Shown: positions 9,026-27,545 of the stretch, one piece after another
Position numbering within the stretch: position 1 is the stretch's first letter
Layout: every line of letters starts with the position of its first letter
IMG/VR virus record: IMGVR_UViG_3300027996_002186
Location: 62,001-126,000 of that record
Direction: 5' to 3' (one strand)
DNA length: 64,000 bases
Translations under genes and position numbers: made by a program
The notes under the pieces: model-generated
Databases searched by the model: none
Told to the model about the DNA's origin: nothing
What the model saw: the letters and a program-made list of their open reading frames with translations, nothing else

Positions 9026-9029
9026 GTAA

Positions 9030-9061: not shown

Positions 9062-9072
9062 TATATCATGTA

Positions 9073-10269: not shown

Positions 10270-10314
10270 ATTGGCATGGTGTGTGTTAATACAGGTAGTT
10301 GAGTTATTTATATA

Positions 10315-10622: not shown

Positions 10623-11092
10623 ATAATTATATTACCTTTATTTATATACTTTTTATTTTTAGTAAAAAGAAATGACTTAAATTCTTTATTTCCTCTTTCT
10701 GCATTACAATCTTTACAACAAACAACTAGATTTACTTGACAATTATTACCACCTTCTGATATGGGTACTATATGATCCGCCGTAGCGTTTTCATAACTTA
10801 ACTTTTCTTCACAATATAAACAAAGGCTACCTTTGTTTTTATTTATGAAATCTTTAGCGAATCCGCTAGTTCTTCTTTTAACATTTTTACCGCTATATTT
10901 TAGTCCGACCACAACAAAGTCTTTCATATATTTGAATTTTTTCCTATATATCTCACAAGATTTATAGTTCTTATTTACAATGACTACCAACTTTATTAAA
11001 AATTTCCATCTGTTGTATGTTTTCTTTTCTACTGAGAGAAAATGTGGGTGTTCCGATTTTACTAGGAATTTTATTACTTTTATTACTTTCAT
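10619..11092 (-). CDS. HNH endonuclease
   Basis: CLYC...TADHIVPISEGG...NLVVCCKDCNAERGN. Confidence 0.85.
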   Translation of the reverse strand: MKVIKVIKFLVKSEHPHFLSVEKKTYNRWKFLIKLVVIVNKNYKSCEIYRKKFKYMKDFVVVGLKYSGKNVKRRTSGFAKDFINKNKGSLCLYCEEKLSYENATADHIVPISEGGNNCQVNLVVCCKDCNAERGNKEFKSFLFTKNKKYINKGNIII

Positions 11093-11163
11093 ATTTTATC
11101 AATTTATATATTGAATTTTCTCATTTTCCTCGTTTAATATATACCTAAAATAAAATAACCACT

Positions 11164-11475
11164 ATGCGTAAATTTAAATTACCAAAAACTTTCTTTGGAT
11201 GGTCTAACATTAAATGGGCTATTAAAGAGCTTACAAATGTTTATTCAACAAACAAATCTTTCTTTTCTAAGAAAAGACTAGAATCTGGAATGGCTTTTTT
11301 AGTTGGTCAATTCGGGATGGTGTATTTCATGATACAAAATCATTCTACAATGACTGCATCTGACTTAGCTATCTGGGCTGGGATAGAGTTTGCTATATCT
11401 GGGTATATGGTTACTCAAATACAGAAAGAAAAGAAAAAGGGTGATCCGGAAGGAAGTCACGAAGAACAAGTTTAA
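11164..11475 (+). CDS. Small membrane protein, possible holin
   Basis: 103 aa, two hydrophobic segments, charged C-terminus; late-promoter motif at 11135. Confidence 0.4.
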   Translation: MRKFKLPKTFFGWSNIKWAIKELTNVYSTNKSFFSKKRLESGMAFLVGQFGMVYFMIQNHSTMTASDLAIWAGIEFAISGYMVTQIQKEKKKGDPEGSHEEQV

Positions 11476-13249: not shown

Positions 13250-14008
13250 ATGCTAAATTATAAAGAGTATTTAAAGGAGGCCCAAGATAATCAAGTCGTT
13301 GTGTTGGATGATGGACAAGGTGGTAATATGTTTAAGACTGTTAAAAATGGTAGTAAGAACTCAATTACTTATCTTAATGCTGTTATAAAAAGGTTTATCG
13401 AAAGTGTTTATGGATCATCTGGGTTTGTTTATGGTAAACATACTGATATATTTATCGATAATAAGATAATTAATGGTGAGTATATATCAAAGATGGTTAA
13501 TAATTACACCATTTTTAAAAATGTGATAAGAATTAATAATATTAAAGAGGAAGAATCTTTTTATAATTTTATGTTATCTAATCTGAATAATATTTATTCA
13601 CCAAATGGTAAATTCTTTTTAGAACAATCATTACCTATTTTAATAAACACAACTAGAAGGGGAAATGTACTTGAAAAAATGGCTAAGGAATCCTTTTTAA
13701 AGTATTCTAAAGAAAAAGATATCGAGATTACTATACAAAACCCTTCTGTTGATGAAGATATAAACGGTGTTGATTTCAAATTCTTATCCAATGGTAGAAG
13801 TTTTACTGTTCAAGTAAAGCCATTTACTGATTATAAGTATATTGGTGATAAAATTTTCATAAAGACAGAAGGATCTTTATCATTGAATACAAACTACTTG
13901 ATACTATGTGATGGTAAGAATTGTATTAAATTAAGAAATACACCCTCTAATCCAGTTAAAATAAAAGGTAATACTTTTATTTCAAGTAAATCTAATCTAC
14001 TTATTTAA
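13250..14008 (+). CDS. Putative PD-(D/E)xK-fold nuclease-like protein
   Basis: G-x2-LE helix followed by DINGVDF...TVQVK; N-terminal tag MLNYKEYLKE. Confidence 0.45.
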   Translation: MLNYKEYLKEAQDNQVVVLDDGQGGNMFKTVKNGSKNSITYLNAVIKRFIESVYGSSGFVYGKHTDIFIDNKIINGEYISKMVNNYTIFKNVIRINNIKEEESFYNFMLSNLNNIYSPNGKFFLEQSLPILINTTRRGNVLEKMAKESFLKYSKEKDIEITIQNPSVDEDINGVDFKFLSNGRSFTVQVKPFTDYKYIGDKIFIKTEGSLSLNTNYLILCDGKNCIKLRNTPSNPVKIKGNTFISSKSNLLI

Positions 14009-15462
14009 ATCCACCGAATATATCCATTACCACACTCAATCTTCTTGTTATTTCTGGCATACCTAATGGTTCAATAATAGAATTAATTGGTGATAGTATT
14101 GATTTCTCAAATTGTATATCATAATCTATCTCAGGAGCAAATTCAATCGGGTAAGACCCTCTAGCATAAGCAAATGTGGAATTAACTGATTTATCTTTAC
14201 AGATATAATATTTAATCTTTGTACCAGATTTCATAAATTCATACTTATCTTGTAATTTCTTATCATTGTTCAATAAGTAATTATGATAAGCGGCCGCTTT
14301 AACAGCAAAGTGAGCTCCACTTATAAATTGTAATGGTAATGTTTTATCATTTAAAACTTTCTCATCATATTTATTACAAGATGATTGCATTGCGATATCA
14401 TCAACATCAGCCAATTCAAATTCCTTTCTAAGACCTTTTACCAATTTAAGTAAATCCTTTATATTGAATGTATCGGGATTCTCAAATAAATACTCTACTA
14501 TCCCAACAATCTTATCACGAGCAAAGGCTGGTGTGGATGACCTAACAAGTTCAACTCCTTTAGGATAAATATATTTCAATCTATCATATGGAATACCATC
14601 CTCATATAAAATATGTTGTATGTATTTTTTCTTAGCAATATTTATAATTGATTCTGATATTCTTTCAAGTTCAAAATCTTCTTTGTTTTCAACACCATAT
14701 GATTCTGCGTGTTTATCTAAACAATCTTTGAAGTAACCCTCATATTTTATTTGGTCAACTCCTAATATAAAATCAACCTCAGTAGACCAGTTCCAGATAA
14801 TATCATTTGTTAAAACTCCATCATCTATCATCTTATTTAACTTCCTATCTTTCACGAAGTTACCATCTATTAAAACTAACCCATAATCTTCTTTCAGAAG
14901 TTCTGTAAATTCCGTGATATCTTTTGACATACCCAAATAATTTGGATTATCTGTTTCTATCAAATCTCTTGATAGTATAATAAATTTCTTATCAATTGAA
15001 GATAGATATTCATCGTTAAATACTTGATCTCTCCAAGTACAATGGTCCATACAAGGTTTGAATGAAACAAAAATTGAATCGGTATCACCATAGATACTAA
15101 CATCCTCTTTCGTATCAATTGGTGTGATATCTTTTATATTTAATTGTTTGTGTAGCTCAGTATCAAGATGCCATTGATTATACCAATAATCTTGGTTATC
15201 ATCATCCATCTTTCTAGTCAATTCTCTACCCTCTGCTGTTATAGTACCTGCAACGTGGTTGTTATAAAGTATGAAGTATGGTGTTGCGAAGGCTCCATAA
15301 GAACCATTCAATACAAGTTTTAGTCATTTACCCCCACTTAAAATAAAGCGGGGGTGATTAAAGAGCGAGTTGAAGGGCATTGTAGTAATCTACTTCCTTT
15401 TTCAACTCGCTCGCTTTAATTTTTAATGACTCGATTTTTTTTATTTTTTCGGTTTTTGTCAT
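14001..15462 (-). CDS. Family B DNA polymerase, C-terminal subunit of a split gene, interrupted by a 40-nt gap at 15321-15360
   Basis: ORF1 15462-15361 (MTKTEK...YYNALQLAL*) plus ORF2 from 15320 (KLVLNGSYGAF...YGDTDS...KKKY...KGVELVRSSTP) together rebuild motif B QLALKLVLNGSYG and motif C. No exonuclease domain or motif A is present in the window. Confidence 0.9.
15321..15412 (-). other. Candidate programmed translational bypass element in polB
   Basis: CTT TAA TCACCCCCGCTT-TATTTT-AAGTGGGGGT AAATGA CTA AAA, plus a perfect 12-bp inverted repeat at 15363-15374 / 15401-15412. Confidence 0.7.
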
Positions 15463-15527
15463 ATTTAATAAATTTGTTATAAAGGGTACTTATACATTTT
15501 GATATATAAATAAACCTCTTAAAGTAT

Positions 15528-15614
15528 ATGATAAAGGAAGAAAAAGTTTCAGTAAAAATCGGACCACGTAACATAAAATATTTTAATATGTGTGGATATG
15601 ATGTTACACTTTAG
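15528..15614 (+). pseudogene. Truncated N-terminus of a homing-endonuclease-like gene
   Basis: MIKEEKVSVKIGPRNIKYFNMCGYDVTL*, similar to the N-terminus of the remnant at 10315. Confidence 0.45.
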
Positions 15615-15664
15615 TCAGGCGCAATTTGGTCAGATAACAGAACTATACGCCTATATGGTATTTG

Positions 15665-15986
15665 TTATGCTGATTGATAACCACTTATATTCTCACCATC
15701 ATAATAGTCGATACCTATCCAATTTTCATAATCTTCTACATTCACGTTTATATAATTCCCATTGTGGTAATAATTCACCAGGTATAATAATAAACAATAT
15801 AGGATCTGCCATTAGCTCTGTACCTCTTTTAACCTTTGTTTGTTTTGATTTTAATTTTACAATATCAACCTTTGATACATTATCAACTCCATATCTCTCT
15901 AAACAGGTTTCTTTTATTTTAGATATGATTGATTTTTTATTTATCTTATATTGATTATAGTAATGGAAATAGTAGTAACCTATCAC
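15665..15986 (-). pseudogene. Frameshifted homing-endonuclease-like remnant
   Basis: KIKETCLERYGVDNVSK repeat motif and WELYKRECRRL, continuing in another frame as YENWIGIDYYDGE before a stop. Confidence 0.55.
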
Positions 15987-16048
15987 TATTTGATTAATCA
16001 GATATATTATATTTTAAATTTAATATATAATAAAAATAACAGTATCAA

Positions 16049-16432
16049 ATGAGGTTAAAGAAGTTTAATAGTTTCAAAATTAATGAATCAGAAGAGTTGA
16101 TGGAAACTCCTGTTGAGACTGGTAGCAAAGCATCTACATTAACTGGTGAGGTTACTCTTTATAGACTCACTTCTCATCCGGTTGTTGATCTTTCTTCACC
16201 TGGTGAGTATTATGTATGTGATAAAGGTGATATCGACCCTTCTATATTAGATAAGAAAGAAAGTTCTGAGTTATATTTAATTACGGTTACTTGTGATTCT
16301 TCTAATATTGACTTAGATAAATCTGAAATGGAGATTGCTAACTTAGGAAACGATTCTATCGTAGCAGTTAAAGATGATAATGTTTGTAAGGTTATTAGTG
16401 TTACTCCTTATGGAAACAATCCAGTAGATTAA
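16049..16432 (+). CDS. Hypothetical protein, putative internal head protein
   Basis: MRLKKFNSFKINE tag; TAATATATA at 16021. Confidence 0.55.
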   Translation: MRLKKFNSFKINESEELMETPVETGSKASTLTGEVTLYRLTSHPVVDLSSPGEYYVCDKGDIDPSILDKKESSELYLITVTCDSSNIDLDKSEMEIANLGNDSIVAVKDDNVCKVISVTPYGNNPVD

Positions 16433-16457
16433 TATGAATCGAATTTAGTTGGATTCA

Positions 16458-17360
16458 TTAATAGATAATTGGTCCATCAAACCCCAAACGAACATTTTGA
16501 CCATCAAACACAATTGTTTCCGTTATCTCAGAAGGCTTAAATGTATTTTTGTGATAAACTTTCATTGGTCTTCTAAAGTCTTCTTCTGGTGGAGTATAGA
16601 CATAATTAAAACACTCACATCCACCACCCGTTCTTTTCCAAGACTTGGTTAAAAAAAAGTTATCACCTATTAATTCCTTTATGTGAAAATAAATATAATT
16701 CTCTTTTGAGTATTCATTGATAGGCATTAAAGATACTAAACCAATATCATTTATCTCAACAGAGTTTGCCCATTCTAAATATTTAAATACTTCTTCTGGT
16801 GTATCTATATAATTCTTTATTAAGTTACATCTGAATTGTACTTGGTGTGGATGTGTTTGTAAATGGCTTATAGCCTTTATCTCTTCTGATGTAGGAGTTT
16901 TGCATTTGAATATCTCATCATTAATCTTATCATCATAGTGGTGACGACTAAGTTGTATATAATCATATCTTTTAGCAATAGGGTCGTTAAATAACTTCTC
17001 CCATCTAAATCCGTCTGTATTCAGTGATAATTCACAATCAGGTGCATATTCCACACCAACATTGGACATTTCCAGAAAATTATCCCAATATAAAGTTGGT
17101 TCTCCACCAGAAATGGCTATTTTTCTAATCTTAATTCTATCTGATATATGTTGTAAGACTTCTTTATATTTTTTACCGTTCCATTTGGATGCGTCTGAGT
17201 GATATGTACAGAATGAGCACTTAGCGTTACAGAATTTAGTTCTAACATAAAGATTTATATAAGGTTCTTCAATGGCGTTTCCCTCCTCCTCTCCAAATAA
17301 GGCACAATTATGAGTTATTAGCTTAATTTCTTTCCCGAATAATTCGATTGATTCTAACAT
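16458..17360 (-). CDS. Radical SAM protein
   Basis: CNAKCSFC (CxxxCxxC), SGGEPTL, NTDG. Confidence 0.9.
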   Translation of the reverse strand: MLESIELFGKEIKLITHNCALFGEEEGNAIEEPYINLYVRTKFCNAKCSFCTYHSDASKWNGKKYKEVLQHISDRIKIRKIAISGGEPTLYWDNFLEMSNVGVEYAPDCELSLNTDGFRWEKLFNDPIAKRYDYIQLSRHHYDDKINDEIFKCKTPTSEEIKAISHLQTHPHQVQFRCNLIKNYIDTPEEVFKYLEWANSVEINDIGLVSLMPINEYSKENYIYFHIKELIGDNFFLTKSWKRTGGGCECFNYVYTPPEEDFRRPMKVYHKNTFKPSEITETIVFDGQNVRLGFDGPIIY

Positions 17361-17370
17361 TATTTATTTA

Positions 17371-17631
17371 TTAACAAGATGATCTTGAATATGATGAATC
17401 ATCGTTTCGAAATCTCGAAATTGATGATTTTGGTGTTGGTGTTACTTTTTTATTAATTCGTGGCTCGATATCATTTTCGATACAAAACTTTATATAAACA
17501 GATCTTTTCAAATCGCCTGTGTTTATTAAATCTTCACAAGCATCATTAAATTTTGATTCAAGGTTAGTACCTTCATATCTACCTTTGTAGAATTGTAAAA
17601 GTTTTGCTAAAAGTTCTAATTGTTGGTCCAT
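17371..17631 (-). CDS. Hypothetical protein
   Basis: 86-aa ORF between nadR and the radical SAM gene, with a Ser/Arg-rich C-terminus ending in Cys. Confidence 0.55.
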   Translation of the reverse strand: MDQQLELLAKLLQFYKGRYEGTNLESKFNDACEDLINTGDLKRSVYIKFCIENDIEPRINKKVTPTPKSSISRFRNDDSSYSRSSC

Positions 17632-17649
17632 TGTGAATTCTTATTTTAG

Positions 17650-18669
17650 TTATATATTAAATTGTGAATTTACAATTTCAATAGATTTGCTTAATCTATC
17701 TCTCCAATTACCACCCACTTCTATATAATTACAATTGTACTTTTCCAATTCTGATTTAATAACATTATAATGTTCCATCCTTTCTTCTAAAAACTGTCGT
17801 GTTCCGTCTTGAACACCATCACAATCAGGTTTCAATAGTAAGTATAAATCATAATTACTATTTTTATATACTTTATCTAGTAATATGTTTTCAATACTTT
17901 TATAACCATTTGGAAAATACATTTTTGAGAAGAGGTATGTTGTTATATCCTCTGTATCACAGAATAATAATTTATTGGATGTCTTTATTTTTTGATTTTC
18001 CAATTCTTGTCGACCAACAGATATTGGGATAAAGTCTTCTATTCCTATTTTATTACCATTTCTTTCAAATACAGTTCTGCCATATTCCTCAACAAAATTT
18101 GTGTTATAGTATTTAGCTAAATTTTCACTCATTGTTGATTTCCCAACAGATTCCGGCCCCATAATAACAATTCTCTTAACGAAGTAGGGTTTTATTTCAT
18201 CCGGTATAAATTCCCAACTATCAAAGGGGTTAGTTCTTACTTTAGTTCCTGATATAGGAAATTTCTTTCTTTCTTTATCAACTAGATAGTGTTTTATACC
18301 CAAATATTTAGCAAAATCATCACCGTAATTCTCAGAAGTGAATACACAATCTAATTTACCAACAAATTTATAAACAAATGGAACCCAATAAGAATAAAAT
18401 TCATCAAGTGATTTACATTCGTGTTCATATTGTGGCATCTCACTATCATCAACAGAGTGTATTATGACATTTGGGTTACTTTCATATATTTCTCGTAAAG
18501 ATTTTACTCTTAATTTACCAGGGATTGTTTGTGTAGGATTATGACAAGCTAAAACATGAACAACTTCCGAATTTTCCAAAGCGGTGTCTATTAAATAAAG
18601 GTGCCCGGTGTGTAATCCGTAGAATTTACCCAATACTAAACTACTTTTGTACTTTTTATCCATTTCCAT
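17650..18669 (-). CDS. nadR: NadR-like NMN adenylyltransferase / ribosylnicotinamide kinase (no HTH domain)
   Basis: GKFYGLHTGH (HxGH), ISGTKVR, P-loop GPESVGKST, EYGR, CDTE, DGTR. Confidence 0.9.
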   Translation of the reverse strand: MEMDKKYKSSLVLGKFYGLHTGHLYLIDTALENSEVVHVLACHNPTQTIPGKLRVKSLREIYESNPNVIIHSVDDSEMPQYEHECKSLDEFYSYWVPFVYKFVGKLDCVFTSENYGDDFAKYLGIKHYLVDKERKKFPISGTKVRTNPFDSWEFIPDEIKPYFVKRIVIMGPESVGKSTMSENLAKYYNTNFVEEYGRTVFERNGNKIGIEDFIPISVGRQELENQKIKTSNKLLFCDTEDITTYLFSKMYFPNGYKSIENILLDKVYKNSNYDLYLLLKPDCDGVQDGTRQFLEERMEHYNVIKSELEKYNCNYIEVGGNWRDRLSKSIEIVNSQFNI

Positions 18670-19184
18670 AATCCAATTGATGCTAATATTAAGAATAAAC
18701 CATATACATATGATGATACGTCTAAGCCATTTGATGAGAATAATACTATTAATAGAATGTCATTTATAATCCAAAGAATCCAAGCTTCTATTTTCTTCTT
18801 CACTAATAGGAATGTAGCCATAACACCCAATGTCATTACAGCAGAGTCTAGAAATGGCATATTACCACCATATTCACTTGTTATACAAAACGTGGTCATG
18901 TATAGAATAATGGTGCTGGTTGTTAGATATCCTAATTGCTTTTTATTTAACCAACTAATAGCCAATTCTTCTTTTGGTTTGCTCCAGTTTATCCAACCTA
19001 GTATAGATTGGACTAGAAATACACCTTGTAAAACTAAATCACCAAGTAAGTTATGGTTGTAAAAGATAACAGAGTAAAAGATAACTCCTACGATACCAAA
19101 TGGCCAACATAATATGTTATCTTTTACTGTTAGAATAACAGCTAGTAACGTGAATAAAACAGCTACTGCCTCAATAATATCCAT
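18636..19184 (-). CDS. pnuC: PnuC-family nicotinamide riboside/vitamin transporter
   Basis: Multi-pass membrane protein with WPFGI, GWINW, PFLDS and EAWILWIIND motifs; overlaps nadR. Confidence 0.9.
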   Translation of the reverse strand: MDIIEAVAVLFTLLAVILTVKDNILCWPFGIVGVIFYSVIFYNHNLLGDLVLQGVFLVQSILGWINWSKPKEELAISWLNKKQLGYLTTSTIILYMTTFCITSEYGGNMPFLDSAVMTLGVMATFLLVKKKIEAWILWIINDILLIVLFSSNGLDVSSYVYGLFLILASIGLWKWIKSTKVV

Positions 19185-21166
19185 TAAATCTTAAATTTAA
19201 TTGTAGCGAAGAAGTTGAATGGTGGATTAACAAAGAAGTGTCTATCTGTACCAACTGCGTATCCATTAGTGTAATAACTTTCATTAGTTATGTTATTTAC
19301 TCTAATACTTAAACTGTGTTGTTTATAGAATTTATAATCAACTTGAGCATTTAATACCACAAAATCTGGTGTTGTGAGTGTGTTCTCCATATCAATATAA
19401 GACTCTGAGTGGTACTTCACATCAAATCCAACTCTTATTCTATCTTTTGAATCTTTAATCACCACACCTTGGTTAATTATCAAATTAGGTGTGTATAATG
19501 GACTAAATTCTTTCCCATCATCATTAATTCTGTTATAAGAGTATGATGATGTATTAACTAATAATAAGTTAATTTTCTTTTTACTAAATAAACTTAAAGT
19601 CATATCTAATTCAATACCACTTCTAAAAGAGTTTTCAACATTAGTCATTAACGGTAAACCATTTGAACCAATTGCTCCTAATAATGTTATTTCATTTTTG
19701 AAATCCATATAGTATAGATTACCTTGTAACTTAAAGTTATCTAATGTTATATTAGTACCTAATTCATAATCAACAACCGATTCTGGTTTAACATCTATGT
19801 AACTAATAGGATCATCTTCTCCCATAAAAATATCATTTCTTGTTGGTTCTCTTTGTGATTGACCAACAGAAGCATAGAAGTTATAGTGTTTACATTTCGT
19901 GAACATTATACCACCTTTTGGGTTGAAGAATGTCCATTCAAATGGTGCCATATCCATAGTACCTTGATACTTGAAATCAACGTATCTAACTTGAGCATCT
20001 CCGAAAAGAGTAAACTTCTTTATATCATATCCGAATTTAACAAATGATGATACTTCGTTTTTAAGTCCTTTATTAGAATATAGTTCATCTGTGTTTGCTA
20101 ATACAGTCATAGCATGTCGTCTATCATACATATTACCACTAACACCAATATTCAATCTATATTTATTACCAGTTAAGTTATAGTTAGAGGTTAATCCATA
20201 GAAGTTAGAACCTAAATTGAAGTTAAGAACATCATCCCCTCCACCAAGTGGTAGTAAATCTAATCCCCAATCTCCATCTAATCTATTATAGAAAGCGGTA
20301 GTCGTTAAATTTGACTTGTTAAAAAAGTGTTTGTGTTTTAAGATAACCATACTTTGTGTAAAGTCGTCATTTTCTCTAGTAGTATTATAGTTAGTTCTTG
20401 GTTCTGATTTTATATCATCTTCTGAAACTGCGAACCAAGCCATTTCATTAGTTGTGTGTCCATTGAATGCTGTTATTTTAACAAAATCCTTTTCTCCATA
20501 ATAACCACCACTTAAAAAGAATGATTGTCCTTCACCACCTGAGTTATATTTGTATCCATCACTCGCGTAATTTGAATATCTAGTATAAAAGGCTGTTTTA
20601 TTTTTTAGTAATCCTGTTGAGTTTTCAATACTAACTCTATAAGTATTAAATGATCCATATCCAATTTGTCCTTCTGTTCCTTTCTTTAATCCCGTTGGTG
20701 ATTCAAAATTAATAGAACCAGCATATGAGGAAACACCGTTTGTTGATGTACCAACACCACGTTGTATCTGCATTGACCTAATTGAGTTTGTAAAATCTGG
20801 GTAATTTGAGAAATATACACCTTGGTCCTCTGGTTCATTAAGAGGAACCCCATCGAGTGTCATATTAATTCTAGTTTGGTCAATACCTCTCAATCTAAAG
20901 TAAGTATATCCCATATTGTGACCGCCATCTGTTGATGATGTTACACTTGGTGTTGTGTTTAATAACAACGGTAATTCTTGTGTATGATACATAACATCTA
21001 TATCATCTTTACTGATTGTTTTCTGAGTGACTGGTGTTTTAGATCCAGCTCTAATTCCTTGTATAGTAACTTCTTCAATTTGCACCATTGATGTGTCAAC
21101 CTTTAGAGTATCCTGTGAATACGATGTTGATGTTGCTAATAAAAATAAAAATAGTAATTTCTTCAT
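19184..21166 (-). CDS. TonB-dependent outer-membrane receptor (Bacteroidota vitamin-receptor type)
   Basis: Signal peptide; plug motifs RLRGIDQTRINMTLDGVPLNEPE and IQRGVGTSTNG; barrel end NNITNESYY...FFATIKFKI; coupled to pnuC by a TAATG overlap. Confidence 0.9.
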   Translation of the reverse strand: MKKLLFLFLLATSTSYSQDTLKVDTSMVQIEEVTIQGIRAGSKTPVTQKTISKDDIDVMYHTQELPLLLNTTPSVTSSTDGGHNMGYTYFRLRGIDQTRINMTLDGVPLNEPEDQGVYFSNYPDFTNSIRSMQIQRGVGTSTNGVSSYAGSINFESPTGLKKGTEGQIGYGSFNTYRVSIENSTGLLKNKTAFYTRYSNYASDGYKYNSGGEGQSFFLSGGYYGEKDFVKITAFNGHTTNEMAWFAVSEDDIKSEPRTNYNTTRENDDFTQSMVILKHKHFFNKSNLTTTAFYNRLDGDWGLDLLPLGGGDDVLNFNLGSNFYGLTSNYNLTGNKYRLNIGVSGNMYDRRHAMTVLANTDELYSNKGLKNEVSSFVKFGYDIKKFTLFGDAQVRYVDFKYQGTMDMAPFEWTFFNPKGGIMFTKCKHYNFYASVGQSQREPTRNDIFMGEDDPISYIDVKPESVVDYELGTNITLDNFKLQGNLYYMDFKNEITLLGAIGSNGLPLMTNVENSFRSGIELDMTLSLFSKKKINLLLVNTSSYSYNRINDDGKEFSPLYTPNLIINQGVVIKDSKDRIRVGFDVKYHSESYIDMENTLTTPDFVVLNAQVDYKFYKQHSLSIRVNNITNESYYTNGYAVGTDRHFFVNPPFNFFATIKFKI

Positions 21167-21182
21167 ATTTTTTGTTATTGAT

Positions 21183-21542
21183 TTATATTGATTGATTTAT
21201 TATTGATTCTCTGTTTTCTGATTTAAGATATTCGAAAAAGTCTTTTAGTAAAATATTTTCTGTTCCATCATACTCATATTCACTACCACTTCCTATATTC
21301 CCATAATTTATATTTGAGTTTTTAAACTCATTAAATTTTTCTTCTAATTTCTTACTCATTTCAGTGGATGTATGGATATCAATTGTATTGTCTCTTTCAT
21401 CTAAGTAAAAAGTGAACAATTTGTTATCTAATCCAGTTCTTTTGTGGTGTACCGAGACGAATCTTTTACCAAGTACCTCAATATGGTCTGAGTTATCACA
21501 TTTAAGTTCAATTCCGTAAAATGGTAAGTATAAATTTATCAT
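21183..21542 (-). CDS. Hypothetical protein
   Basis: 119-aa ORF with C-terminal RESIINQSI. Confidence 0.55.
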   Translation of the reverse strand: MINLYLPFYGIELKCDNSDHIEVLGKRFVSVHHKRTGLDNKLFTFYLDERDNTIDIHTSTEMSKKLEEKFNEFKNSNINYGNIGSGSEYEYDGTENILLKDFFEYLKSENRESIINQSI

Positions 21543-21562
21543 ATTAGATTAAAATTATTTGA

Positions 21563-22351
21563 TTAAATATCATCCTCTTCAAAATCTTGTTCGAAGCTAA
21601 GCATCAAATTAGATTCTTCATCTTTAACTAACATAAAGGTTTCGAATATACTGAATGTGATTTTTTCTCTCTCAGCGTTTATGCAATTTAAAAACCTTTT
21701 ATTAAAAATAAGGTTAGAACTTCTATCATCTTCTAAGTTATCGACTTCTAAATCCCAAGCTGATTTTTCAGAGAAGTTAACAATACCTTTATCGATACCA
21801 ATATTTATAATTCTCTCTGAGTTAATACTTGAAAGTTTTTTAATATCAGTGAAATCATCTTTCGTAAGAGCGAATGACCATTTACTATTTTTTAGATTTA
21901 AGTTCTTAGCTAACATTTCTTTATTGATTTCTCTAGTTTCATTATTGTGTTCTCCACCAACCCAATTAATCTTAAATCGACCACAAGATACTTGGAAATA
22001 TCTTACTTGATAAATGTCTCTATCATCGGCTGATGGTTTATAATTAAATTCTATTGTTACTTTATCCGGATCCTTGATCATACCAAGGTTCTTAACAAAT
22101 TTCTTGATATTAGGTATGACTAAATCTAATTGATAATCTAGGTCATCGTTTTTTATGAGAAATTCATCTGTTGGTATTAAATAGTTTTTGAAGGCGAGTA
22201 ATATATTCTTACCTAAGATAGAATACATTAATACATCATCATTATCTATTTTCAACCTAACACTATCATCAATAGTTGATAAATCACTTAATTTAGAAAC
22301 AAATGTATTAAATGTGTCTCCGTTTATTTTAAATTTTACTTTATTCGCCAT
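21563..22351 (-). CDS. Putative DNA polymerase sliding clamp (gp45-like)
   Basis: 262 aa with a repeated helix/strand pattern and acidic tail; size fits a clamp, and a clamp loader is present in the window. Confidence 0.5.
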   Translation of the reverse strand: MANKVKFKINGDTFNTFVSKLSDLSTIDDSVRLKIDNDDVLMYSILGKNILLAFKNYLIPTDEFLIKNDDLDYQLDLVIPNIKKFVKNLGMIKDPDKVTIEFNYKPSADDRDIYQVRYFQVSCGRFKINWVGGEHNNETREINKEMLAKNLNLKNSKWSFALTKDDFTDIKKLSSINSERIINIGIDKGIVNFSEKSAWDLEVDNLEDDRSSNLIFNKRFLNCINAEREKITFSIFETFMLVKDEESNLMLSFEQDFEEDDI

Positions 22352-22421
22352 TTCGTAGAAATATTATTACTAAGTATATCATGTAAATCTTTTTTTGTTT
22401 AGTTATTTTAATATATATGTT

Positions 22422-22748
22422 ATGGTAAAAAAATGGAATCAATTTATTAGAGAATTCATAGAGAACTCGGATAATGTTATCGATATTAAAATGCAAGAGA
22501 TAAGAACACTTATAAATGGTGTTTCTGATGGCCAGAACATAGTATATGAATGGGAGAATAAAAATGATCATCAATTAATAGTTAATTTCACTAAAGATGA
22601 TTTATCTATTAGATATGAATTTGACATCGATAATTTGATAGTTAAAAAAATAGTTGGTGATACTGTTGATTTCACCAATCAGGCAAAATCCATAAGTGGT
22701 GGGTTAATTAATATTGAAAAGGATATACATATGGTTTTAAGTATTTAA
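22422..22748 (+). CDS. Hypothetical protein
   Basis: Likely start ATG 22422 (MVKKWNQFIRE) just after TAATATATA. Confidence 0.55.
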   Translation: MVKKWNQFIREFIENSDNVIDIKMQEIRTLINGVSDGQNIVYEWENKNDHQLIVNFTKDDLSIRYEFDIDNLIVKKIVGDTVDFTNQAKSISGGLINIEKDIHMVLSI

Positions 22749-23129
22749 GATAGGTTTAACGTGTTCGTTAATTATTCTTTCAACTTCCTTTAACTTCTTT
22801 CTCGTAGTTTTAACATCTAATTGAATTCTCCAATTTCTAACAAGTACATCATCATCATCTGGAATTTCTTCGATTATTATATCGAAGTCTTCATCTTCCT
22901 TTAAAATTTCAAAGAAATTCTCATCACTTTCAAAAGAAGTCTTAAATTCTTTCATTGTCTTTTCATCAATCTGTTGATAAGCACCATAAGGATCTAGAAC
23001 CTCATATGTACCATTTTCGTTTGGTTCAAATATATGACCTTTTTCATAAATGACCTTTTCCTTTGAAAGGCCCATAAAATCAGTCTTTATACACCAATCT
23101 TCTTTTGATATAAATCTAGGATACTTCAT
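22737..23129 (-). CDS. Hypothetical protein
   Basis: 130-aa acidic ORF. Confidence 0.55.
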   Translation of the reverse strand: MKYPRFISKEDWCIKTDFMGLSKEKVIYEKGHIFEPNENGTYEVLDPYGAYQQIDEKTMKEFKTSFESDENFFEILKEDEDFDIIIEEIPDDDDVLVRNWRIQLDVKTTRKKLKEVERIINEHVKPILNT

Positions 23130-23153
23130 TTTTAATTTGTTTTTTATAAAATA

Positions 23154-23651
23154 TTAACTACGACCTAAATAGTTCATTAATTCAATCATATTCTTTATTG
23201 AATATGAAAAGCTTTCAAGATTTCTTACGGTGTCTCTTAAAAATTCTATATATGATTCTATTAATTCCATACATCTATCATTCTCGGCTAGGTGACCGTC
23301 TATTAAAATACCCTTTTCTCCTAAATTGGTTTTCATACCAAAACCCGTTGCATAAAAAACAAATTTATCTTGTCTAAGTTTCTTTATCTTAGTCGTTTCT
23401 CTACTACGTTTATTTAAAAAGAAGTTAATTTGTTCGTTAATTTGTTGTCTGTGTGTGAGAGCGTTAGCTTGAGCATCAAGTAATGGTTTAGCATTTGAGG
23501 GAATACTTAAATCCAAAGAAAGTACTTGAAATAATGGTTCCACATTTTTATTCCAATCTGTTCTTTTGTCATTAAAGAAGTCTTCTAATTTATCATTAGT
23601 CTCCTTTGCTTTTTTGATTCTCTCTAATTCTTCTTGGTTATATGGGTTCAT
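23154..23651 (-). CDS. uvsY: UvsY-like recombination mediator
   Basis: Helical 165 aa; C-terminal IEFLRDTVRNLESFSYSIKNMIEL matches the UvsY-type ending. Confidence 0.6.
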   Translation of the reverse strand: MNPYNQEELERIKKAKETNDKLEDFFNDKRTDWNKNVEPLFQVLSLDLSIPSNAKPLLDAQANALTHRQQINEQINFFLNKRSRETTKIKKLRQDKFVFYATGFGMKTNLGEKGILIDGHLAENDRCMELIESYIEFLRDTVRNLESFSYSIKNMIELMNYLGRS

Positions 23652-23728
23652 ACTTAAATATTTTTTTCATTTGTTAATCATACCTTTTATGTCTTTATCT
23701 ATGTTTTGATTTAAATATTTTTCAAAAT

Positions 23729-24007
23729 TTATTTATTTATTTCATCCATAATCTTTGAGATTTTGAAATCTCTTATGATTTTAATTGTTGAATTATCGAT
23801 ACCCTCATATATATCATTTGATGAGTGACCATTATTATTGATAATATTTAATACTGATATTAATGATTCTCCCATCTCATCTAGATGTTGATTGATAATA
23901 TTCTTCTTATTAATATTATTATTTTTTATATAATCAGAAATTATAATTATATGTGATGTTAGGTAATCAAGGTATTCATTAATTTCTAACTCTGTTGGTT
24001 CTTGCAT
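23729..24007 (-). CDS. Hypothetical protein
   Basis: 92 aa with C-terminal IRDFKISKI. Confidence 0.5.
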   Translation of the reverse strand: MQEPTELEINEYLDYLTSHIIIISDYIKNNNINKKNIINQHLDEMGESLISVLNIINNNGHSSNDIYEGIDNSTIKIIRDFKISKIMDEINK

Positions 24008-24073
24008 ATGTATCGAATTTTATCTAAAAATGGGTATTTTGTTTATTATATATACTAAAAATAAAAGTATCTT

Positions 24074-24805
24074 ATGAGTATAACAATAGGAAACCTTAAA
24101 AGGGTTATGAAAAACAAAGGATATAAATGGTATACAGATAGACCTAATATGATAGGAGTGAGAACCACATTAGATATACCAGATTCGTTTAATGATTTCT
24201 TCTGTATGGTTTATTCTATCCCAGAAATGCCTTCTACTTTATCATTAAAACAAAAACAATCTTTTTTAAATAATTGGGGATTTATAGGAGCCAATGGTAG
24301 AAAATTATCGGAGGATGGTGTTAGTGGTAAAAATACTGATTATGCTATTTCTCAATATGAATCTAAGAAGGGAAAAGAAGATTTAAAAATATTTCCGAAT
24401 ACAACTAACCCTGGGGTTTATTGGTTAAACCACCCTATGAATAAAATGGGATCAGCTGTTCTTAAACCTGGTCAATGGGAAGATTGTTGGTCTCGTGGAC
24501 AACACATAAAGCCTAGTCATAGAGCATTAAGACAAACTGGTAAGATAACAGTTTATAGAGATAATGATAAAGATAATAATTATGACTTGAATGAGTCTAA
24601 TACACAAAATGGTTTATTTGGTATAAATATTCATGGTTCTGGTAGAAAGTACCCTTCTAAACAAATTGGTAAATGGTCTGCTGGTTGTCAAGTTTTCTCT
24701 AATTGGGAACATAAAGAGTTTGTGATGGATGTTTGTGATAATTTCAAAGCACACACTGGTAATAAATTTACTTATACATTAATAGATGAAGTTGATTTAG
24801 TTTAA
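24074..24805 (+). CDS. Putative endolysin / L,D-transpeptidase-like peptidoglycan hydrolase
   Basis: GLFGINIH...WSAGCQV (His...Cys pair); inserted EDGVSGKNT segment resembling a peptidoglycan-binding helix motif. Confidence 0.6.
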   Translation: MSITIGNLKRVMKNKGYKWYTDRPNMIGVRTTLDIPDSFNDFFCMVYSIPEMPSTLSLKQKQSFLNNWGFIGANGRKLSEDGVSGKNTDYAISQYESKKGKEDLKIFPNTTNPGVYWLNHPMNKMGSAVLKPGQWEDCWSRGQHIKPSHRALRQTGKITVYRDNDKDNNYDLNESNTQNGLFGINIHGSGRKYPSKQIGKWSAGCQVFSNWEHKEFVMDVCDNFKAHTGNKFTYTLIDEVDLV

Positions 24806-26150: not shown

Positions 26151-26237
26151 TCACGACCACTTGTATTTTTTTAGTAGTATATCATAAACATCTGATTTTA
26201 TATCATTACTTTCGTTAAATTTTCTTAGATATTTCAT
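26151..26237 (-). pseudogene. Truncated tagged mini-ORF
   Basis: MKYLRKFNESNDIKSDVYDILLKKYKWS*, with an ATGA overlap to the upstream methyltransferase gene. Confidence 0.4.
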
Positions 26238-26806
26238 GTCTTAGCAACTATTTCTAACCATTTTGATTGATTATCATAAAGAATTCCTTCCTTTATCTCA
26301 GATGAAACTATCTCAAATTCATTTGATACTAAATCTTCCCAAGTTTCTTTATTAAATATTGTTTTACCTGTTTGTATATCATTTACTAACTTAACAGTAA
26401 ATACTAAATACTCTTTTGTGATTCTACTAATGTCTTTGAATATACTTTGTAATTCTGACTCACTGAAATAGTGAAGTCCTAATCTAGAATAAACTAAATC
26501 AAATGAATTATCAGGAAATGGGAATTTGTTTTTGGTGTCGTGTTTAACACAGTTAATCTTCTGATTAACGTGGTCTACATATTGTTGATTGTTTTCTGTT
26601 CCGAATACTACATATCCTCTTTTTAAGAGTTCTAAAGCATCAGCCCCGTTACCACAAGAAATTTCTAAGATAGAACCACTTGAAATAAGTGATTGTATTT
26701 TCTCTACTAACTCAATATCAGCATTGTCATCTAACTTTAGTAGAGTGTCTTGATTATTTAATTCTTCTTGATTCTCGAATATTTTTCTAGTGAGTAAGTG
26801 TTTCAT
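26234..26806 (-). CDS. Class I SAM-dependent methyltransferase
   Basis: ILEISCGNG, FPFPDNSFDLVYSRLGLHY. Confidence 0.85.
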   Translation of the reverse strand: MKHLLTRKIFENQEELNNQDTLLKLDDNADIELVEKIQSLISSGSILEISCGNGADALELLKRGYVVFGTENNQQYVDHVNQKINCVKHDTKNKFPFPDNSFDLVYSRLGLHYFSESELQSIFKDISRITKEYLVFTVKLVNDIQTGKTIFNKETWEDLVSNEFEIVSSEIKEGILYDNQSKWLEIVAKT

Positions 26807-26822
26807 TAGAGTATATATAAAA

Positions 26823-27545
26823 CTACTCTAATCTTTTTTTAGTTAAGTCAATAGCTTTCTGATTTATATCACATCCAATGAAATCCCTCTTTAGCTCCTT
26901 ACAAACAACAGCACATGTACCGCTTCCTAGGTAAAAATCAGCTACCAAATCACCTTCATCTGACGAAGCTCTTATTATTCTATCAATAAGTTCTTTCGGT
27001 TTCTGTGTATCATATCCAACTCGCTCCTTCTTATCGTTTTGTCCTAGAATATTCATTTTCCATACATCACCAATTACTTTACCGTCTTTGTGATAGTACT
27101 TTTCTTTAGCATAACCTCTTGGTGCACTTTTAGCATAAGGTTCTCTGATTGGGTTGAACTTATAATTGTTACTTTTAGTGAATCGGTATATTATATCATG
27201 TCTTTTTCCAAAATCTAATTTCTTTCTGGGAGCTGTATTGTAATTCCATATGATTTCGTTTCTCATATTATCATACCCGAATATGTCTTCCATTATACAA
27301 CGTATCCAGTGATTGATTTTAGTATCCATTTGTAGGTATATGGTTCCTGTATCCTTTAATACGCGGTGCATCTCCTTTAATCTAGGTATATAGTGTTCTT
27401 CTATATCAGATTTTATGGGTTTTAAGTCTTGGTAGTCTTTGAATTTCCTACCAGTCCCATATAAGATATCTACGTATATCAAATCTATTGAGTTGTCATC
27501 TAATGTTTTTAGTAAATCAAGATTATCTTGGCATGATATGTTCAT
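26823..27545 (-). CDS. N6-adenine/N4-cytosine DNA methyltransferase (beta class)
   Basis: DLIYVDILY at the DPPY position, TQKPKELIDRII, DFYLGSGT, FIGCD. Confidence 0.85.
   Translation of the reverse strand: MNISCQDNLDLLKTLDDNSIDLIYVDILYGTGRKFKDYQDLKPIKSDIEEHYIPRLKEMHRVLKDTGTIYLQMDTKINHWIRCIMEDIFGYDNMRNEIIWNYNTAPRKKLDFGKRHDIIYRFTKSNNYKFNPIREPYAKSAPRGYAKEKYYHKDGKVIGDVWKMNILGQNDKKERVGYDTQKPKELIDRIIRASSDEGDLVADFYLGSGTCAVVCKELKRDFIGCDINQKAIDLTKKRLE

What the first reader, a model, noticed from the sequence alone, without database searches (positions are those of the whole stretch)
17650..21166. Phage-encoded TonB receptor-PnuC-NadR operon: a full import-and-rebuild route to NAD+
Seen: three translationally coupled genes encoding an outer-membrane TonB-dependent receptor, an inner-membrane PnuC transporter, and a NadR with both HxGH adenylyltransferase and P-loop kinase domains. 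Established: PnuC plus NadR convert nicotinamide riboside to NMN and NAD+. Some phages (e.g. KVP40) carry pnuC and nadR, and the phage pathways NARP1 and NARP2 rebuild NAD+ against NAD-depleting defences such as Thoeris and SIR2 systems. Inference: adding its own outer-membrane receptor would let the phage scavenge an external precursor, a distinct import-based NAD-rescue strategy. The receptor could also affect superinfection. Caveat: the plug motifs resemble Bacteroidota thiamine receptors, so the substrate is uncertain.
Basis: partly seen in the sequence, partly recalled or inferred. Interest (0 to 1): 0.8.

Follow-up and report, generated by a model that had tools for sequence, protein, structure and literature searches.

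The report
Huge-phage NAD precursor uptake operon
A giant phage of Bacteroidota carries, as one tightly packed unit copied from its hosts, an outer-membrane TonB-dependent transporter, the inner-membrane PnuC transporter and a NadR enzyme, which together should import a vitamin B3 precursor and turn it into NAD+; the two inner parts match the recently published phage counter-defence pathway NARP3, and the outer-membrane part is the new addition.

Summary
Three overlapping minus-strand genes encode an intact TonB-dependent transporter (660 aa), PnuC (182 aa) and an HTH-less NadR with both catalytic domains (339 aa). They sit inside a genuine huge myophage about 80% identical to LR745206.

PnuC plus HTH-less NadR in phages is already published as NARP3, which rescues phage from Sir2-HerA. 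Phage TonB-dependent receptors have also been reported, but read as SusC/carbohydrate uptake or as surface remodelling.

The new points:
- The receptor is not a phage add-on. The same gene order and the same overlapping junctions occur in Bacteroidota genomes (72 of 78 loci have NadR beside the receptor, 60 have both genes).
- Those bacterial loci often lie beside NrtR, Nampt, Prs, ADP-ribosylglycohydrolase or Macro genes.
- Trees of all three proteins recover the same group of phage copies plus four bacterial loci, so the module moved as a unit.
- It is kept under purifying selection (dN/dS 0.09-0.15) and recurs in viral contigs (28 of 31 IMG/VR receptor loci have NadR nearby).
- No TPP riboswitch was found, which argues against thiamine.

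Verdict: a new variant of a known kind. Substrate and counter-defence role remain untested.

The parts
19184..21166 (-). TonB-dependent outer-membrane transporter, 660 aa. It has a signal peptide, a TonB-box-like IEEVTIQG, a plug (about residues 43-150) and a beta-barrel predicted for the rest.
   Evidence: - Pfam Plug and barrel.
- Only sub-threshold siderophore-type NCBIfam hits and no SusC/RagA hit.
- No PHROG family.
- Model pLDDT 82.8; TM 0.83 to PqqU.
- dN/dS 0.09 against LR745206.
18636..19184 (-). PnuC-family inner-membrane transporter, 182 aa. Its ATG overlaps the receptor stop (TAATG).
   Evidence: - PF04973 153.5 bits, full length.
- TIGR01528 88 bits against a cut-off of 42.45.
- phrog_1880.
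- 4QTN E 1.6e-7.
- dN/dS 0.15.
17650..18669 (-). NadR-like bifunctional enzyme without HTH, 339 aa. N-terminal NMN adenylyltransferase (HxGH, ISGTKVR) and C-terminal ribosylnicotinamide kinase (Walker A and B). The start may be the second ATG at 18663.
   Evidence: - TIGR01526 228 bits; PRK08099 positions 61-405 of 411.
- phrog_3462 267 bits.
- 1LW7 E 2e-43, 8X7F E 1.6e-43, 9X6F E 5.9e-39.
- Motifs conserved in all 81 aligned homologues.
- dN/dS 0.11.
21183..21542 (-). 119-aa ORF ending 16 nt upstream of the receptor gene. It is conserved in LR745206. It may be a relic of the Nudix/NrtR gene that occupies this position in LR756502 and in bacteria. This assignment is tentative.
   Evidence: - No Pfam or PHROG hit.
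- 39% identity to the LR745206 counterpart.
- That counterpart matches the C-terminal 50 residues of the LR756502 NUDIX protein at E 4e-4 in a small database.
- The LR756502 protein is NUDIX at 73.6 bits.
17371..17631 (-). 86-aa ORF directly downstream of NadR, function unknown. It is conserved only in LR745206. It is listed as a neighbour, not as a proven part.
   Evidence: No Pfam, NCBIfam or PHROG hit. 60% identity in L001.

Best explanation
This is a three-step module for importing an NAD+ precursor and rebuilding NAD+. A huge phage of Bacteroidota captured it as a whole from a Bacteroidota NAD-salvage operon.

Proposed mechanism:
1. During infection the phage-encoded TonB-dependent transporter is exported and inserted into the host outer membrane.
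2. Energised by the host TonB-ExbBD, it brings a pyridine precursor into the periplasm. The precursor is nicotinamide riboside, or possibly NMN or NAD+ that is trimmed there.
3. PnuC moves nicotinamide riboside across the inner membrane.
4. The HTH-less NadR phosphorylates it to NMN and adenylates NMN to NAD+.

The result is a raised or defended NAD+ pool in the infected cell. This could serve the phage's own long replication cycle, or offset NAD+-depleting defences as shown for the two-gene NARP3 module.

Shown here: the gene identities, intact motifs, predicted fold, operon architecture, bacterial origin, co-inheritance, and purifying selection in phages.

Inferred: the substrate, membrane insertion, TonB coupling, and the physiological purpose.
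For: Identity and intactness of the three proteins.

Phage setting:
- tail sheath, virion protein, helicase, PolB fragment, terminase, gp19-like and gp15-like proteins;
- 80% nucleotide identity to the 634-kb phage LR745206 with synteny;
- 100% protein identity in IMG/VR contigs of 154-483 kb;
- GC of the three genes 0.307 against 0.304 for the window.

Same architecture in Bacteroidota: of 78 bacterial-labelled loci, 72 have NadR next to the receptor, 63 have PnuC and 60 have both. Most have the same 1-4 base and 8-40 base overlaps.

NAD context in bacteria:
- a Bacteroidia contig of 1.0 Mb carries NrtR-Prs-Nampt-ADP-ribosylglycohydrolase-x-receptor-PnuC-NadR;
- NrtR in 13 loci, Nampt in 10, Prs in 7;
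- ADP-ribosylglycohydrolase or Macro directly upstream in the nearest bacterial relatives.

NAD context in other phages:
- NadE upstream and isochorismatase downstream in LR756501 and in IMG/VR loci;
- a NUDIX gene upstream in LR756502.

Other evidence:
- No TPP or other riboswitch.
- Co-inheritance: the receptor, NadR and PnuC trees each recover the same starred group of phage copies plus L016, L043, L062 and L067, at 100, 100 and 98.
- Retention: dN/dS 0.09-0.15; 28 of 31 IMG/VR receptor loci have NadR within 5 kb and 19 have PnuC; contigs of about 350 kb carry the three genes.
- Function of the inner two genes in phage is shown experimentally for a homologous pair (NARP3, PMC13464706). The window NadR is 32% identical to the TrudiRoth enzyme.
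- A Lak-phage receptor homologue is transcribed in gut metatranscriptomes (bioRxiv 10.64898/2026.10.24.761521).
Against: - No experiment bears on this receptor family in bacteria or phage. The substrate is inferred only from gene context.
- Nicotinamide riboside is small (about 255 Da) and might not need a TonB-dependent transporter, so the true ligand could be larger.
- No periplasmic NAD or NMN processing enzyme was found next to the genes.
- Assembly of a beta-barrel and dependence on host TonB within one infection cycle are unproven.
- No phage TonB, ExbB or ExbD was looked for outside the window.
- No NAD-consuming or other NAD-synthesis gene was found in the window.
- Lak phages and 12 of 31 IMG/VR loci carry the receptor without a detectable PnuC nearby, so the receptor may also work in other combinations.
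- No promoter or terminator was defined.
Confidence: 0.7

Rival explanations
1. The receptor mainly remodels the cell surface. It would do this by superinfection exclusion, receptor masking or acting as a decoy, as proposed for phage outer-membrane proteins in general. Its position beside PnuC-NadR would be incidental.
For: - The huge-phage outer-membrane-protein preprint proposes this role for phage beta-barrel proteins and shows transcription of a Lak receptor.
- Some phages of about 350 kb have an OmpA-like gene just upstream of the receptor.
- Lak phages have the receptor without an adjacent PnuC.
Against: - The receptor-PnuC-NadR order with overlapping junctions is inherited from bacteria, where exclusion makes no sense.
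- The three proteins share one tree topology.
- The plug, TonB box and barrel are all conserved under dN/dS 0.09. That fits a working transporter better than a passive decoy.
- The two roles are not mutually exclusive.
Confidence: 0.1
2. The transport pair handles another vitamin or nutrient. Candidates are thiamine (a PnuT-type system), iron-siderophore, or carbohydrate as a SusC-like protein, as annotated for the LR745206 and Mar_Mega_1 receptors.
For:
- The best NCBIfam hits are siderophore and haem receptor subfamilies, far below their cut-offs.
- JGI names homologues 'iron complex outermembrane receptor protein'.
- The Mar_Mega_1 paper calls its receptor SusC.
Against: - No TPP riboswitch in the window or in 10 bacterial loci.
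- No thiamine pyrophosphokinase nearby. The partner is NadR with an intact ribosylnicotinamide kinase domain.
- PnuC passes the NCBIfam PnuC equivalog cut-off.
- No SusC/RagA hit, no SusD neighbour, and 660 aa is short for SusC.
- Neighbours are NAD genes in bacteria and in other phages.
Confidence: 0.07
3. The module is a host-benefit cargo (a moron) for a long-lasting carrier or pseudolysogenic state. It would let an NAD-auxotrophic or precursor-limited host scavenge vitamin B3, and would not be a device for the lytic cycle or for counter-defence.
For: - The genes are unchanged host-type salvage genes.
- The regulator is lost in the phage copies: no NrtR wHTH in the window, and only a Nudix domain in LR756502. 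This suggests constitutive or phage-timed expression.
Against: - No integrase or lysogeny gene was seen in the window among the ORFs scanned.
- The module lies among replication and structural genes.
- NARP3 shows that the two-gene version works in lytic infection.
- This rival shares the biochemical mechanism with the best explanation and differs only in purpose.
Confidence: 0.1
4. The three genes are bacterial DNA wrongly joined to a phage contig (a chimeric assembly), not phage-encoded.
For: The closest cellular homologues are bacterial, at 40-48% identity.
Against: - Phage genes lie on both sides within the window.
- GC equals the window average.
- The same three genes with the same flanking genes occur in LR745206.
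- They also occur in three IMG/VR contigs at 100% protein identity, and in many independent huge-phage assemblies.
- No bacterial genome copy is closer than 48% identity, while phage copies reach 50-88%.
Confidence: 0.02

Closest known systems
NARP3 (phage PnuC-like transporter Bas30_87 plus HTH-less NadR-like enzyme Bas30_86 of Escherichia phage TrudiRoth; Sci Adv 2026, PMC13464706)
   Same: - An adjacent PnuC-family transporter and a NadR-like protein with NMNAT and RNK domains and no HTH, in a phage genome.
- The expected chemistry is NR to NMN to NAD+.
- The window NadR is 32% identical to the TrudiRoth enzyme over residues 8-291. It matches chain 9X6F, named a nicotinamide-nucleotide adenylyltransferase (origin not checked), at E 5.9e-39.
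   Different: - Here a TonB-dependent outer-membrane transporter gene precedes and overlaps pnuC. The NARP3 paper does not mention TonB, outer membrane or Bacteroidota.
- The gene order is transporter then enzyme.
- The module derives from a Bacteroidota operon, not from the enterobacterial T5-like phage lineage.
- The carriers are huge phages (contigs of about 154 to 735 kb), not phages of about 110 kb.
- The counter-defence activity was not tested.
Bacteroidota chromosomal operon: TonB-dependent receptor, pnuC, nadR, often beside nrtR, prs and nadV (seen here in Flammeovirga, Mucilaginibacter, Niastella, Zobellia, Flavobacterium, Prevotella, Dysgonomonas and others)
   Same: - Same three genes in the same order, with the same overlapping junctions.
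- 40-48% receptor identity.
- The same NadR motifs.
   Different: - The phage copies lack the NrtR regulator and the Nampt, Prs, ADP-ribosylglycohydrolase and Macro neighbours.
- PnuC is shorter, 182 aa against about 209 aa.
- The phage copies form their own large clade.
- I found no paper in the library that describes this bacterial operon or the receptor's substrate.
Phage-encoded TonB-dependent receptors reported in megaphages (Mar_Mega_1 and LR745206 'SusC', PMC9723777; the Lak phage 22-stranded receptor, bioRxiv 10.64898/2026.10.24.761521)
   Same: - The LR745206 receptor is the 84-85% identical orthologue of the window's.
- Lak receptors are 29-32% identical homologues.
   Different: - Those reports read the protein as carbohydrate uptake or as surface remodelling, and do not link it to PnuC or NadR.
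- In Mar_Mega_1 the receptor lies beside a tyrosyl-tRNA synthetase.
- In Lak there is no PnuC within 6 kb.
Haemophilus influenzae NR route (OmpP2 porin, NadN and e(P4) periplasmic processing, PnuC, NadR); NadR structure 1LW7
   Same: PnuC plus bifunctional NadR as the inner-membrane and cytoplasmic steps. NadR matches 1LW7 at E 2e-43 over the whole length.
   Different: - The outer-membrane step here is an energised TonB-dependent transporter instead of a porin.
- No periplasmic nucleotidase or phosphatase gene was seen nearby.
- The Haemophilus pathway details are from general knowledge and were not tested here.
NARP1 and NARP2 (phage NAD+ reconstitution from ADPR plus nicotinamide, or through Nampt plus NMNAT)
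   Same: The same end product, NAD+, and the same likely selective pressure.
   Different: - No Nampt homologue in the window by tblastn.
- No ADPR-PP synthetase or Namat family appeared among the ORFs scanned.
- The precursor here comes from outside the cell rather than from breakdown products.

Membership tests
TonB-dependent transporter (outer membrane) | N-terminal plug domain followed by a 22-strand beta-barrel | tested here: met
   - Pfam Plug 46.5 bits and barrel 93 bits.
- Model pLDDT 82.8 with barrel strands from about residue 163 to 659. I did not count the strands exactly.
- TM 0.80-0.83 to PqqU, FecA and YncD over the full length.
TonB-dependent transporter (outer membrane) | Signal peptide and a TonB box near the mature N-terminus | tested here: met
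   An N-terminal hydrophobic leader ends in YSQ. IEEVTIQG aligns with LEEVVI or LxEVxV of the bacterial homologues. Binding to TonB itself is not testable here.
SusC/RagA-type TonB-dependent transporter | SusC/RagA signature model, N-terminal extension domain, about 1000 aa, adjacent SusD-like lipoprotein | tested here: not met
   - No SusC/RagA family among the NCBIfam hits at E up to 0.01.
- 660 aa.
- The neighbours are PnuC and a 119-aa ORF.
PnuC (nicotinamide riboside transporter family) | Full-length match to the family model above the curated cut-off | tested here: met
   PF04973 153.5 bits, positions 2-175 of 175. TIGR01528 88 bits against a cut-off of 42.45.
PnuC (nicotinamide riboside transporter family) | Specificity for nicotinamide riboside rather than thiamine or riboflavin | tested here: inconclusive
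   Context favours NR: the NadR partner, NAD neighbours and no TPP riboswitch. Binding-site residues could not be mapped reliably from the 4QTN alignment.
NadR-type bifunctional NMNAT/RNK | NMNAT domain with HxGH and ISxTxxR motifs | tested here: met
   GKFYGLHTGH and ISGTKVR. H, G, H are invariant in 81 homologues. Aligned to 1LW7 and 8X7F.
NadR-type bifunctional NMNAT/RNK | C-terminal ribosylnicotinamide kinase P-loop domain | tested here: met
   AAA_28 102.9 bits. Walker A GPESVGKST and Walker B FCDTED.
NadR-type bifunctional NMNAT/RNK | N-terminal HTH regulator domain of enterobacterial NadR | tested here: not met
   The match to PRK08099 starts at model position 61 of 411. The protein starts 10 residues before the NMNAT motif.
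NARP3 | Adjacent PnuC-like and HTH-less NadR-like genes in a phage genome | tested here: met
   Phage setting.
NARP3 | NR import and restoration of NAD+ under an NAD+-depleting defence | not testable with these tools
   This needs uptake, NAD+ and plaque assays as in PMC13464706.
NARP3 | Two-gene unit, as defined in Enterobacteriaceae-infecting phages | tested here: not met
   Here it is a three-gene unit with an outer-membrane transporter. It has a separate Bacteroidota origin.
Thiamine uptake system of Bacteroidota (outer-membrane receptor plus PnuT plus thiamine pyrophosphokinase under a TPP riboswitch) | TPP riboswitch upstream and a thiamine pyrophosphokinase partner | tested here: not met
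   No Rfam family at gathering score in the window or in 10 bacterial loci. The partner enzyme is NadR. The system's definition is from general knowledge.
NrtR regulon of NAD metabolism | NrtR (Nudix plus winged-helix) gene adjacent to the operon | tested here: inconclusive
   - Met in 13 bacterial loci.
- Not met in the window. Only a 119-aa ORF is there, with weak indirect similarity to the Nudix gene of LR756502.
- NrtR binding sites were not searched.

The most novel reading that the evidence does not exclude
This receptor family would be a dedicated outer-membrane importer of pyridine NAD+ precursors (nicotinamide riboside, NMN or NAD+ itself). That would be a substrate class not yet assigned to TonB-dependent transporters. 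Huge phages of Bacteroidota would install it in the infected cell's outer membrane to feed a NARP3-type PnuC-NadR route. The phage would then rebuild NAD+ from the environment, across both membranes, when host immunity or its own demand drains the pool.
Probability: 0.45. Interest if true: 0.75.

Novelty: new variant of a known kind. Interest (0 to 1): 0.6.

Why it matters
- It gives phage-encoded TonB-dependent transporters a concrete, testable job. They have so far been annotated as SusC-type sugar uptake or discussed as surface remodelling.
- It extends the import-based NAD+ reconstitution pathway NARP3, known from enterobacterial phages of about 110 kb, to the huge phages of Bacteroidota. 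There the outer membrane is crossed by an energised transporter.
- It points to an apparently uncharacterised bacterial system: an NrtR-linked TonB-dependent transporter for vitamin B3 precursors, widespread in Bacteroidota. This would bear on B-vitamin exchange in gut, soil and marine communities.
- It is a clean example of a whole multi-compartment pathway (outer membrane, inner membrane, cytoplasm) moving as one unit from host to virus and then being kept for a long time.

Tried and rejected
- **Promoters and terminators.** The sigma-70-type promoter and terminator scan of 16000-24500 gave counts equal to the shuffles. The Bacteroidota -7 motif TANNTTTG is not enriched and is absent just upstream of the receptor. 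No transcription unit could be defined.
- **Riboswitches.** Rfam at gathering score found nothing in the window or in 10 bacterial loci. This argues against riboswitch control but leaves regulation open.
- **Structure job.** I left those rows out and used a new alignment. Those sequences were sent to no other remote tool afterwards.
- **Literature.** No paper links a TonB-dependent receptor with pnuC or nadR:
  - pnuC + nadR + TonB-dependent + Bacteroidetes: 0 papers;
  - PnuC + TonB-dependent + nicotinamide riboside: 1 irrelevant paper;
  - NrtR + TonB: none relevant;
  - TonB + PnuC: 16 papers, none relevant.
- **PnuC binding site.** Mapping the residues from the 4QTN alignment and the numbering quoted in PMC13464706 was not reliable. 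It was dropped.
- **NadR extension.** The 528-aa NadR of Flavihumibacter is not a NadR-PnuC fusion. Its extension is soluble and matches no PnuC.
- **Other NAD genes.** None was found in the window (Nampt, Prs, NadE, isochorismatase, ADP-ribosylglycohydrolase, Macro, NrtR) by tblastn or in the Pfam scans.
- **Mar_Mega_1.** The window is not Mar_Mega_1. Its receptor lies beside a tyrosyl-tRNA synthetase.
- **Not done.**
  - A search for phage tonB, exbB or exbD outside the window.
  - An AU test of the number of independent captures.

Full report
**Observation**

The window holds three minus-strand ORFs at exactly the stated coordinates: 19184-21166 (660 aa), 18636-19184 (182 aa) and 17650-18669 (339 aa).

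The first ORF is a TonB-dependent transporter.
- It has Pfam Plug and TonB_dep_Rec_b-barrel domains.
- It has a signal peptide and a TonB-box-like IEEVTIQG that aligns with the LEEVVI of bacterial homologues.
- It has no PHROG family and no SusC/RagA hit.
- An AlphaFold model built from 26 homologues reached pLDDT 82.8 and pTM 0.82.
- The model superposes over its whole length on solved TonB-dependent transporters. The best match is the PQQ transporter PqqU, then FecA and YncD, at TM about 0.8 and about 15% identity.

The second ORF is a full-length PnuC. It scores 153.5 bits on PF04973 and 88 bits on TIGR01528, above the cut-off of 42.45.

The third ORF is a NadR-type bifunctional enzyme without the HTH.
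- It matches PRK08099 from position 61 of 411.
- It matches H. influenzae NadR 1LW7 at E 2e-43.
- Its HxGH, ISxTxxR, Walker A and Walker B motifs are intact.

The receptor stop and the PnuC start share TAATG. PnuC and NadR overlap by 34 nt, or by 28 nt if the second ATG is used.

**The setting is a huge phage**
- The window also encodes a 1310-aa tail sheath, a virion structural protein, a helicase and a PolB fragment.
- It encodes a T4-type large terminase, gp19-like tube and gp15-like proteins, and a clamp-loader-like ATPase.
- It encodes ClpP, an HNH endonuclease and DNA methylases.
- The region around the genes is 80% identical in DNA to LR745206, a 634,780-bp uncultured phage. The flanking genes are in the same order.
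- IMG/VR contigs of 154, 242 and 483 kb encode the three proteins at 100% identity.
- The genomes above 634 kb from the study that produced LR745206 were predicted to infect Bacteroidetes (PMC7162821).
- The three genes have the window's GC content, 0.307 against 0.304.

A chimeric assembly is therefore very unlikely.

**The three genes recur in phages**
- LR745206 and LR756502 carry the same three genes with the same overlaps.
- LR756501 and LR756503 (735 kb) carry NadE-receptor-x-PnuC-NadR-x-isochorismatase.
- Five metagenomic contigs of 73 to 368 kb with phage-type neighbours (GP88, PhageMetallopep, Phage_L5_gp82, ClpP, homing endonuclease, many ORFs with no family) carry the receptor, PnuC and NadR. 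A CCA-adding enzyme lies just downstream, and in two of them an OmpA-like gene lies just upstream.
- In IMG/VR, 31 viral loci encode a relative of the receptor. Of these, 28 have a NadR-like gene within 5 kb and 19 have PnuC.
- In the curated phage collection the receptor occurs in only 24 of 50,697 records: the megaphages, the Lak phages and a few small faecal contigs. NadR-like genes occur in 799 records and PnuC in 485.
- Between the window and LR745206 all three genes are under purifying selection, with dN/dS of 0.09, 0.15 and 0.11 at dS about 1.

**The module comes from Bacteroidota**

A scan of one genome per prokaryotic species returned 80 loci. Of these, 78 are labelled as bacterial, almost all Bacteroidota. 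The genera include Flammeovirga, Mucilaginibacter, Niastella, Zobellia, Flavobacterium, Capnocytophaga, Prevotella, Dysgonomonas and Hymenobacter.
- In 72 of the 78 loci a NadR-like gene follows the receptor. In 63 there is a PnuC, and in 60 both are present.
- The order is always receptor, PnuC, NadR. The junctions are mostly the same small overlaps as in the phage.

So the outer-membrane receptor is not something the phage added to a PnuC-NadR pair. It is part of the native operon.

**The bacterial context is NAD metabolism**
- On a 1.0-Mb Bacteroidia contig the genes upstream are NrtR (NrtR_WHD 91.6 bits plus NUDIX), a PRPP synthetase, Nampt and an ADP-ribosylglycohydrolase.
- NrtR homologues lie by the receptor in 13 loci, directly upstream in six. 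Nampt is present in 10 loci and Prs in 7.
- The nearest bacterial relatives of the phage copies have ADP-ribosylglycohydrolase or Macro genes directly upstream.
- No Rfam family, and in particular no TPP riboswitch, was found in the window or in ten bacterial loci.

I could not obtain a characterised thiamine receptor sequence for a direct comparison.

**Co-inheritance**
- In the receptor tree (133 rows, FastTree), the window, LR745206, the roughly 350-kb phage contigs and all 43 sampled metagenomic best hits form one clade with support 100. Its sister holds LR756502 and six bacterial-labelled loci.
- In the NadR and PnuC trees (IQ-TREE, quick) the same nine phage copies group with the same four bacterial loci: a Fluviicola MAG, the 1.0-Mb Bacteroidia contig, and two uncultured Flavobacteriales-like contigs. 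Support is 100 and 98.
- These four loci also share the GPES Walker A variant with the phage copies, whereas other Bacteroidota have GTES.
- The copies of the 735-kb phage and of the Lak phages fall outside this group on long branches. This suggests separate captures, but I did not test that formally.
- No bacterial genome copy exceeds 48% receptor identity to the window, while more than a hundred metagenomic clusters reach 50-88%. The sampled clusters are phage-like.
- Together with the matching GC, this indicates long residence in phages.

A possible trace of the capture remains upstream. LR756502 has a 176-aa NUDIX gene (73.6 bits) directly before its receptor gene. It is homologous to the Nudix half of the bacterial NrtR found at that position, but lacks the DNA-binding domain. 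The 119-aa ORF at 21183-21542 of the window is only weakly and indirectly similar to its C-terminus. I list it as tentative.

**What is already known**
- PnuC plus an HTH-less NadR in phages was published in August 2026 as NARP3. The transporter imports nicotinamide riboside, the enzyme makes NMN and then NAD+, and the pair restores NAD+ and phage growth against Sir2-HerA. That paper does not mention TonB, outer membrane or Bacteroidota (PMC13464706).
- pnuC-nadR clusters in jumbo phages were noted in 2024, again without any receptor (PMC11662467).
- The LR745206 receptor was mentioned in 2021 as a 'SusC' that might increase carbohydrate uptake (PMC9723777).
- A 2026 preprint catalogues phage beta-barrel proteins, shows that a Lak receptor is transcribed, and discusses superinfection exclusion. 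It does not mention PnuC or NadR.
- The NrtR regulon paper lists no receptor (PMC2330246).
- Four further searches found no paper linking a TonB-dependent receptor to pnuC or nadR.

The link and the bacterial origin therefore appear to be undescribed in the library I could search. That library does not cover subscription journals.

**Mechanism**

The best-supported reading is a three-compartment pathway.
1. The receptor takes a pyridine precursor across the outer membrane, using host TonB-ExbBD.
2. PnuC takes nicotinamide riboside across the inner membrane.
3. NadR converts it to NAD+.

The biochemical roles of PnuC and NadR rest on strong homology and on the NARP3 experiments. The role of the receptor rests on operon architecture, shared phylogeny and NAD-gene context. 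Its ligand (nicotinamide riboside, NMN or NAD+) is open.

The purpose cannot be decided from sequence. It could be counter-defence against NAD+-depleting immunity, supply for a long and costly infection, or benefit to a persistently infected host. No NAD-consuming or further NAD-synthesis gene was found in the window.

Rivals:
- A primary role of the receptor in surface remodelling (confidence about 0.1).
- Another substrate (about 0.07).
- Host-benefit cargo (about 0.1; same chemistry, different purpose).
- A chimeric assembly (about 0.02).

**Verdict**

The import-and-rebuild idea is now a known kind (NARP3). The new element is the outer-membrane leg and the finding that the whole operon was taken from Bacteroidota and is kept across a large group of huge phages.

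I rate it a new variant of a known kind, with interest 0.6. It also predicts a new substrate class for TonB-dependent transporters in Bacteroidota, which can be tested directly.

Noticed in passing
window 14001-15311 (-) and 15312-16460: The family B DNA polymerase ORF covers only the C-terminal part of the enzyme (phrog_262 positions 520-839). No N-terminal part follows in any frame of the next 1.1 kb. That stretch contains a short peptide that reminded me of homing-endonuclease proteins (not tested). An HNH endonuclease lies at 10619-11092. The polymerase gene may be split by a mobile element.
   Followed up: partly
window 16458-17360 (-): A radical SAM protein lies two genes downstream of NadR. 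Its hits to HxsC-type and viperin-type models are weak and sub-threshold. It is conserved in LR745206 (87%) and LR756502 (46%, opposite orientation). Function unknown, and it is not part of the NAD module in other phages.
   Followed up: partly
L002 (LR756502) 5426-5956: A 176-aa NUDIX protein sits directly upstream of the receptor gene. It is homologous to the Nudix half of the bacterial NrtR found at the same position, but has no winged-helix domain. It may be a regulator turned enzyme or a relic.
   Followed up: partly
L003 (LR756501) 5004-11474; also L111, L106, L113: The 735-kb phage and several IMG/VR contigs carry a larger NAD cluster: NAD synthase NadE, receptor, a 205-aa unknown, PnuC, NadR, and an isochorismatase-family (nicotinamidase-like) gene.
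   Followed up: partly
L090 8767-9861 and L092 8772-9854: In two phage-like contigs (360 kb and 73 kb) an OmpA-like beta-barrel gene lies just upstream of the receptor gene. A CCA-adding enzyme gene lies just downstream of NadR in five contigs of this group (73-368 kb). This is a second outer-membrane protein in the same neighbourhood.
   Followed up: no
L073, L081, L085 (Flavihumibacter): Here NadR follows the receptor directly, with no PnuC, and carries a soluble C-terminal extension of about 190 aa (528 aa in total) that matches no PnuC. Twelve bacterial loci in all have the receptor and NadR without a PnuC between them.
   Followed up: partly
L010 and L011: Two contigs are binned in a Deltaproteobacteria MAG and in a Thalassovita (Roseobacteraceae) MAG. 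L010 carries phage-clade copies of the three genes. L011 carries Bacteroidota-type copies of NrtR and the receptor. They are probably misbinned.
   Followed up: no
L004, L005 (Lak-C1, Lak-B1): Lak megaphages have a receptor homologue (29-32% identity) with no PnuC within 6 kb. Lak-C1 has a weak NadR-like match about 5 kb downstream. All 15 Lak records match NadR somewhere in their genomes.
   Followed up: partly
window 6605-7276 (-), 26234-27545 (-): A ClpP protease, a SAM-dependent methyltransferase and an N6/N4 DNA methylase. These are typical huge-phage accessory genes and are unrelated to the finding.
   Followed up: no
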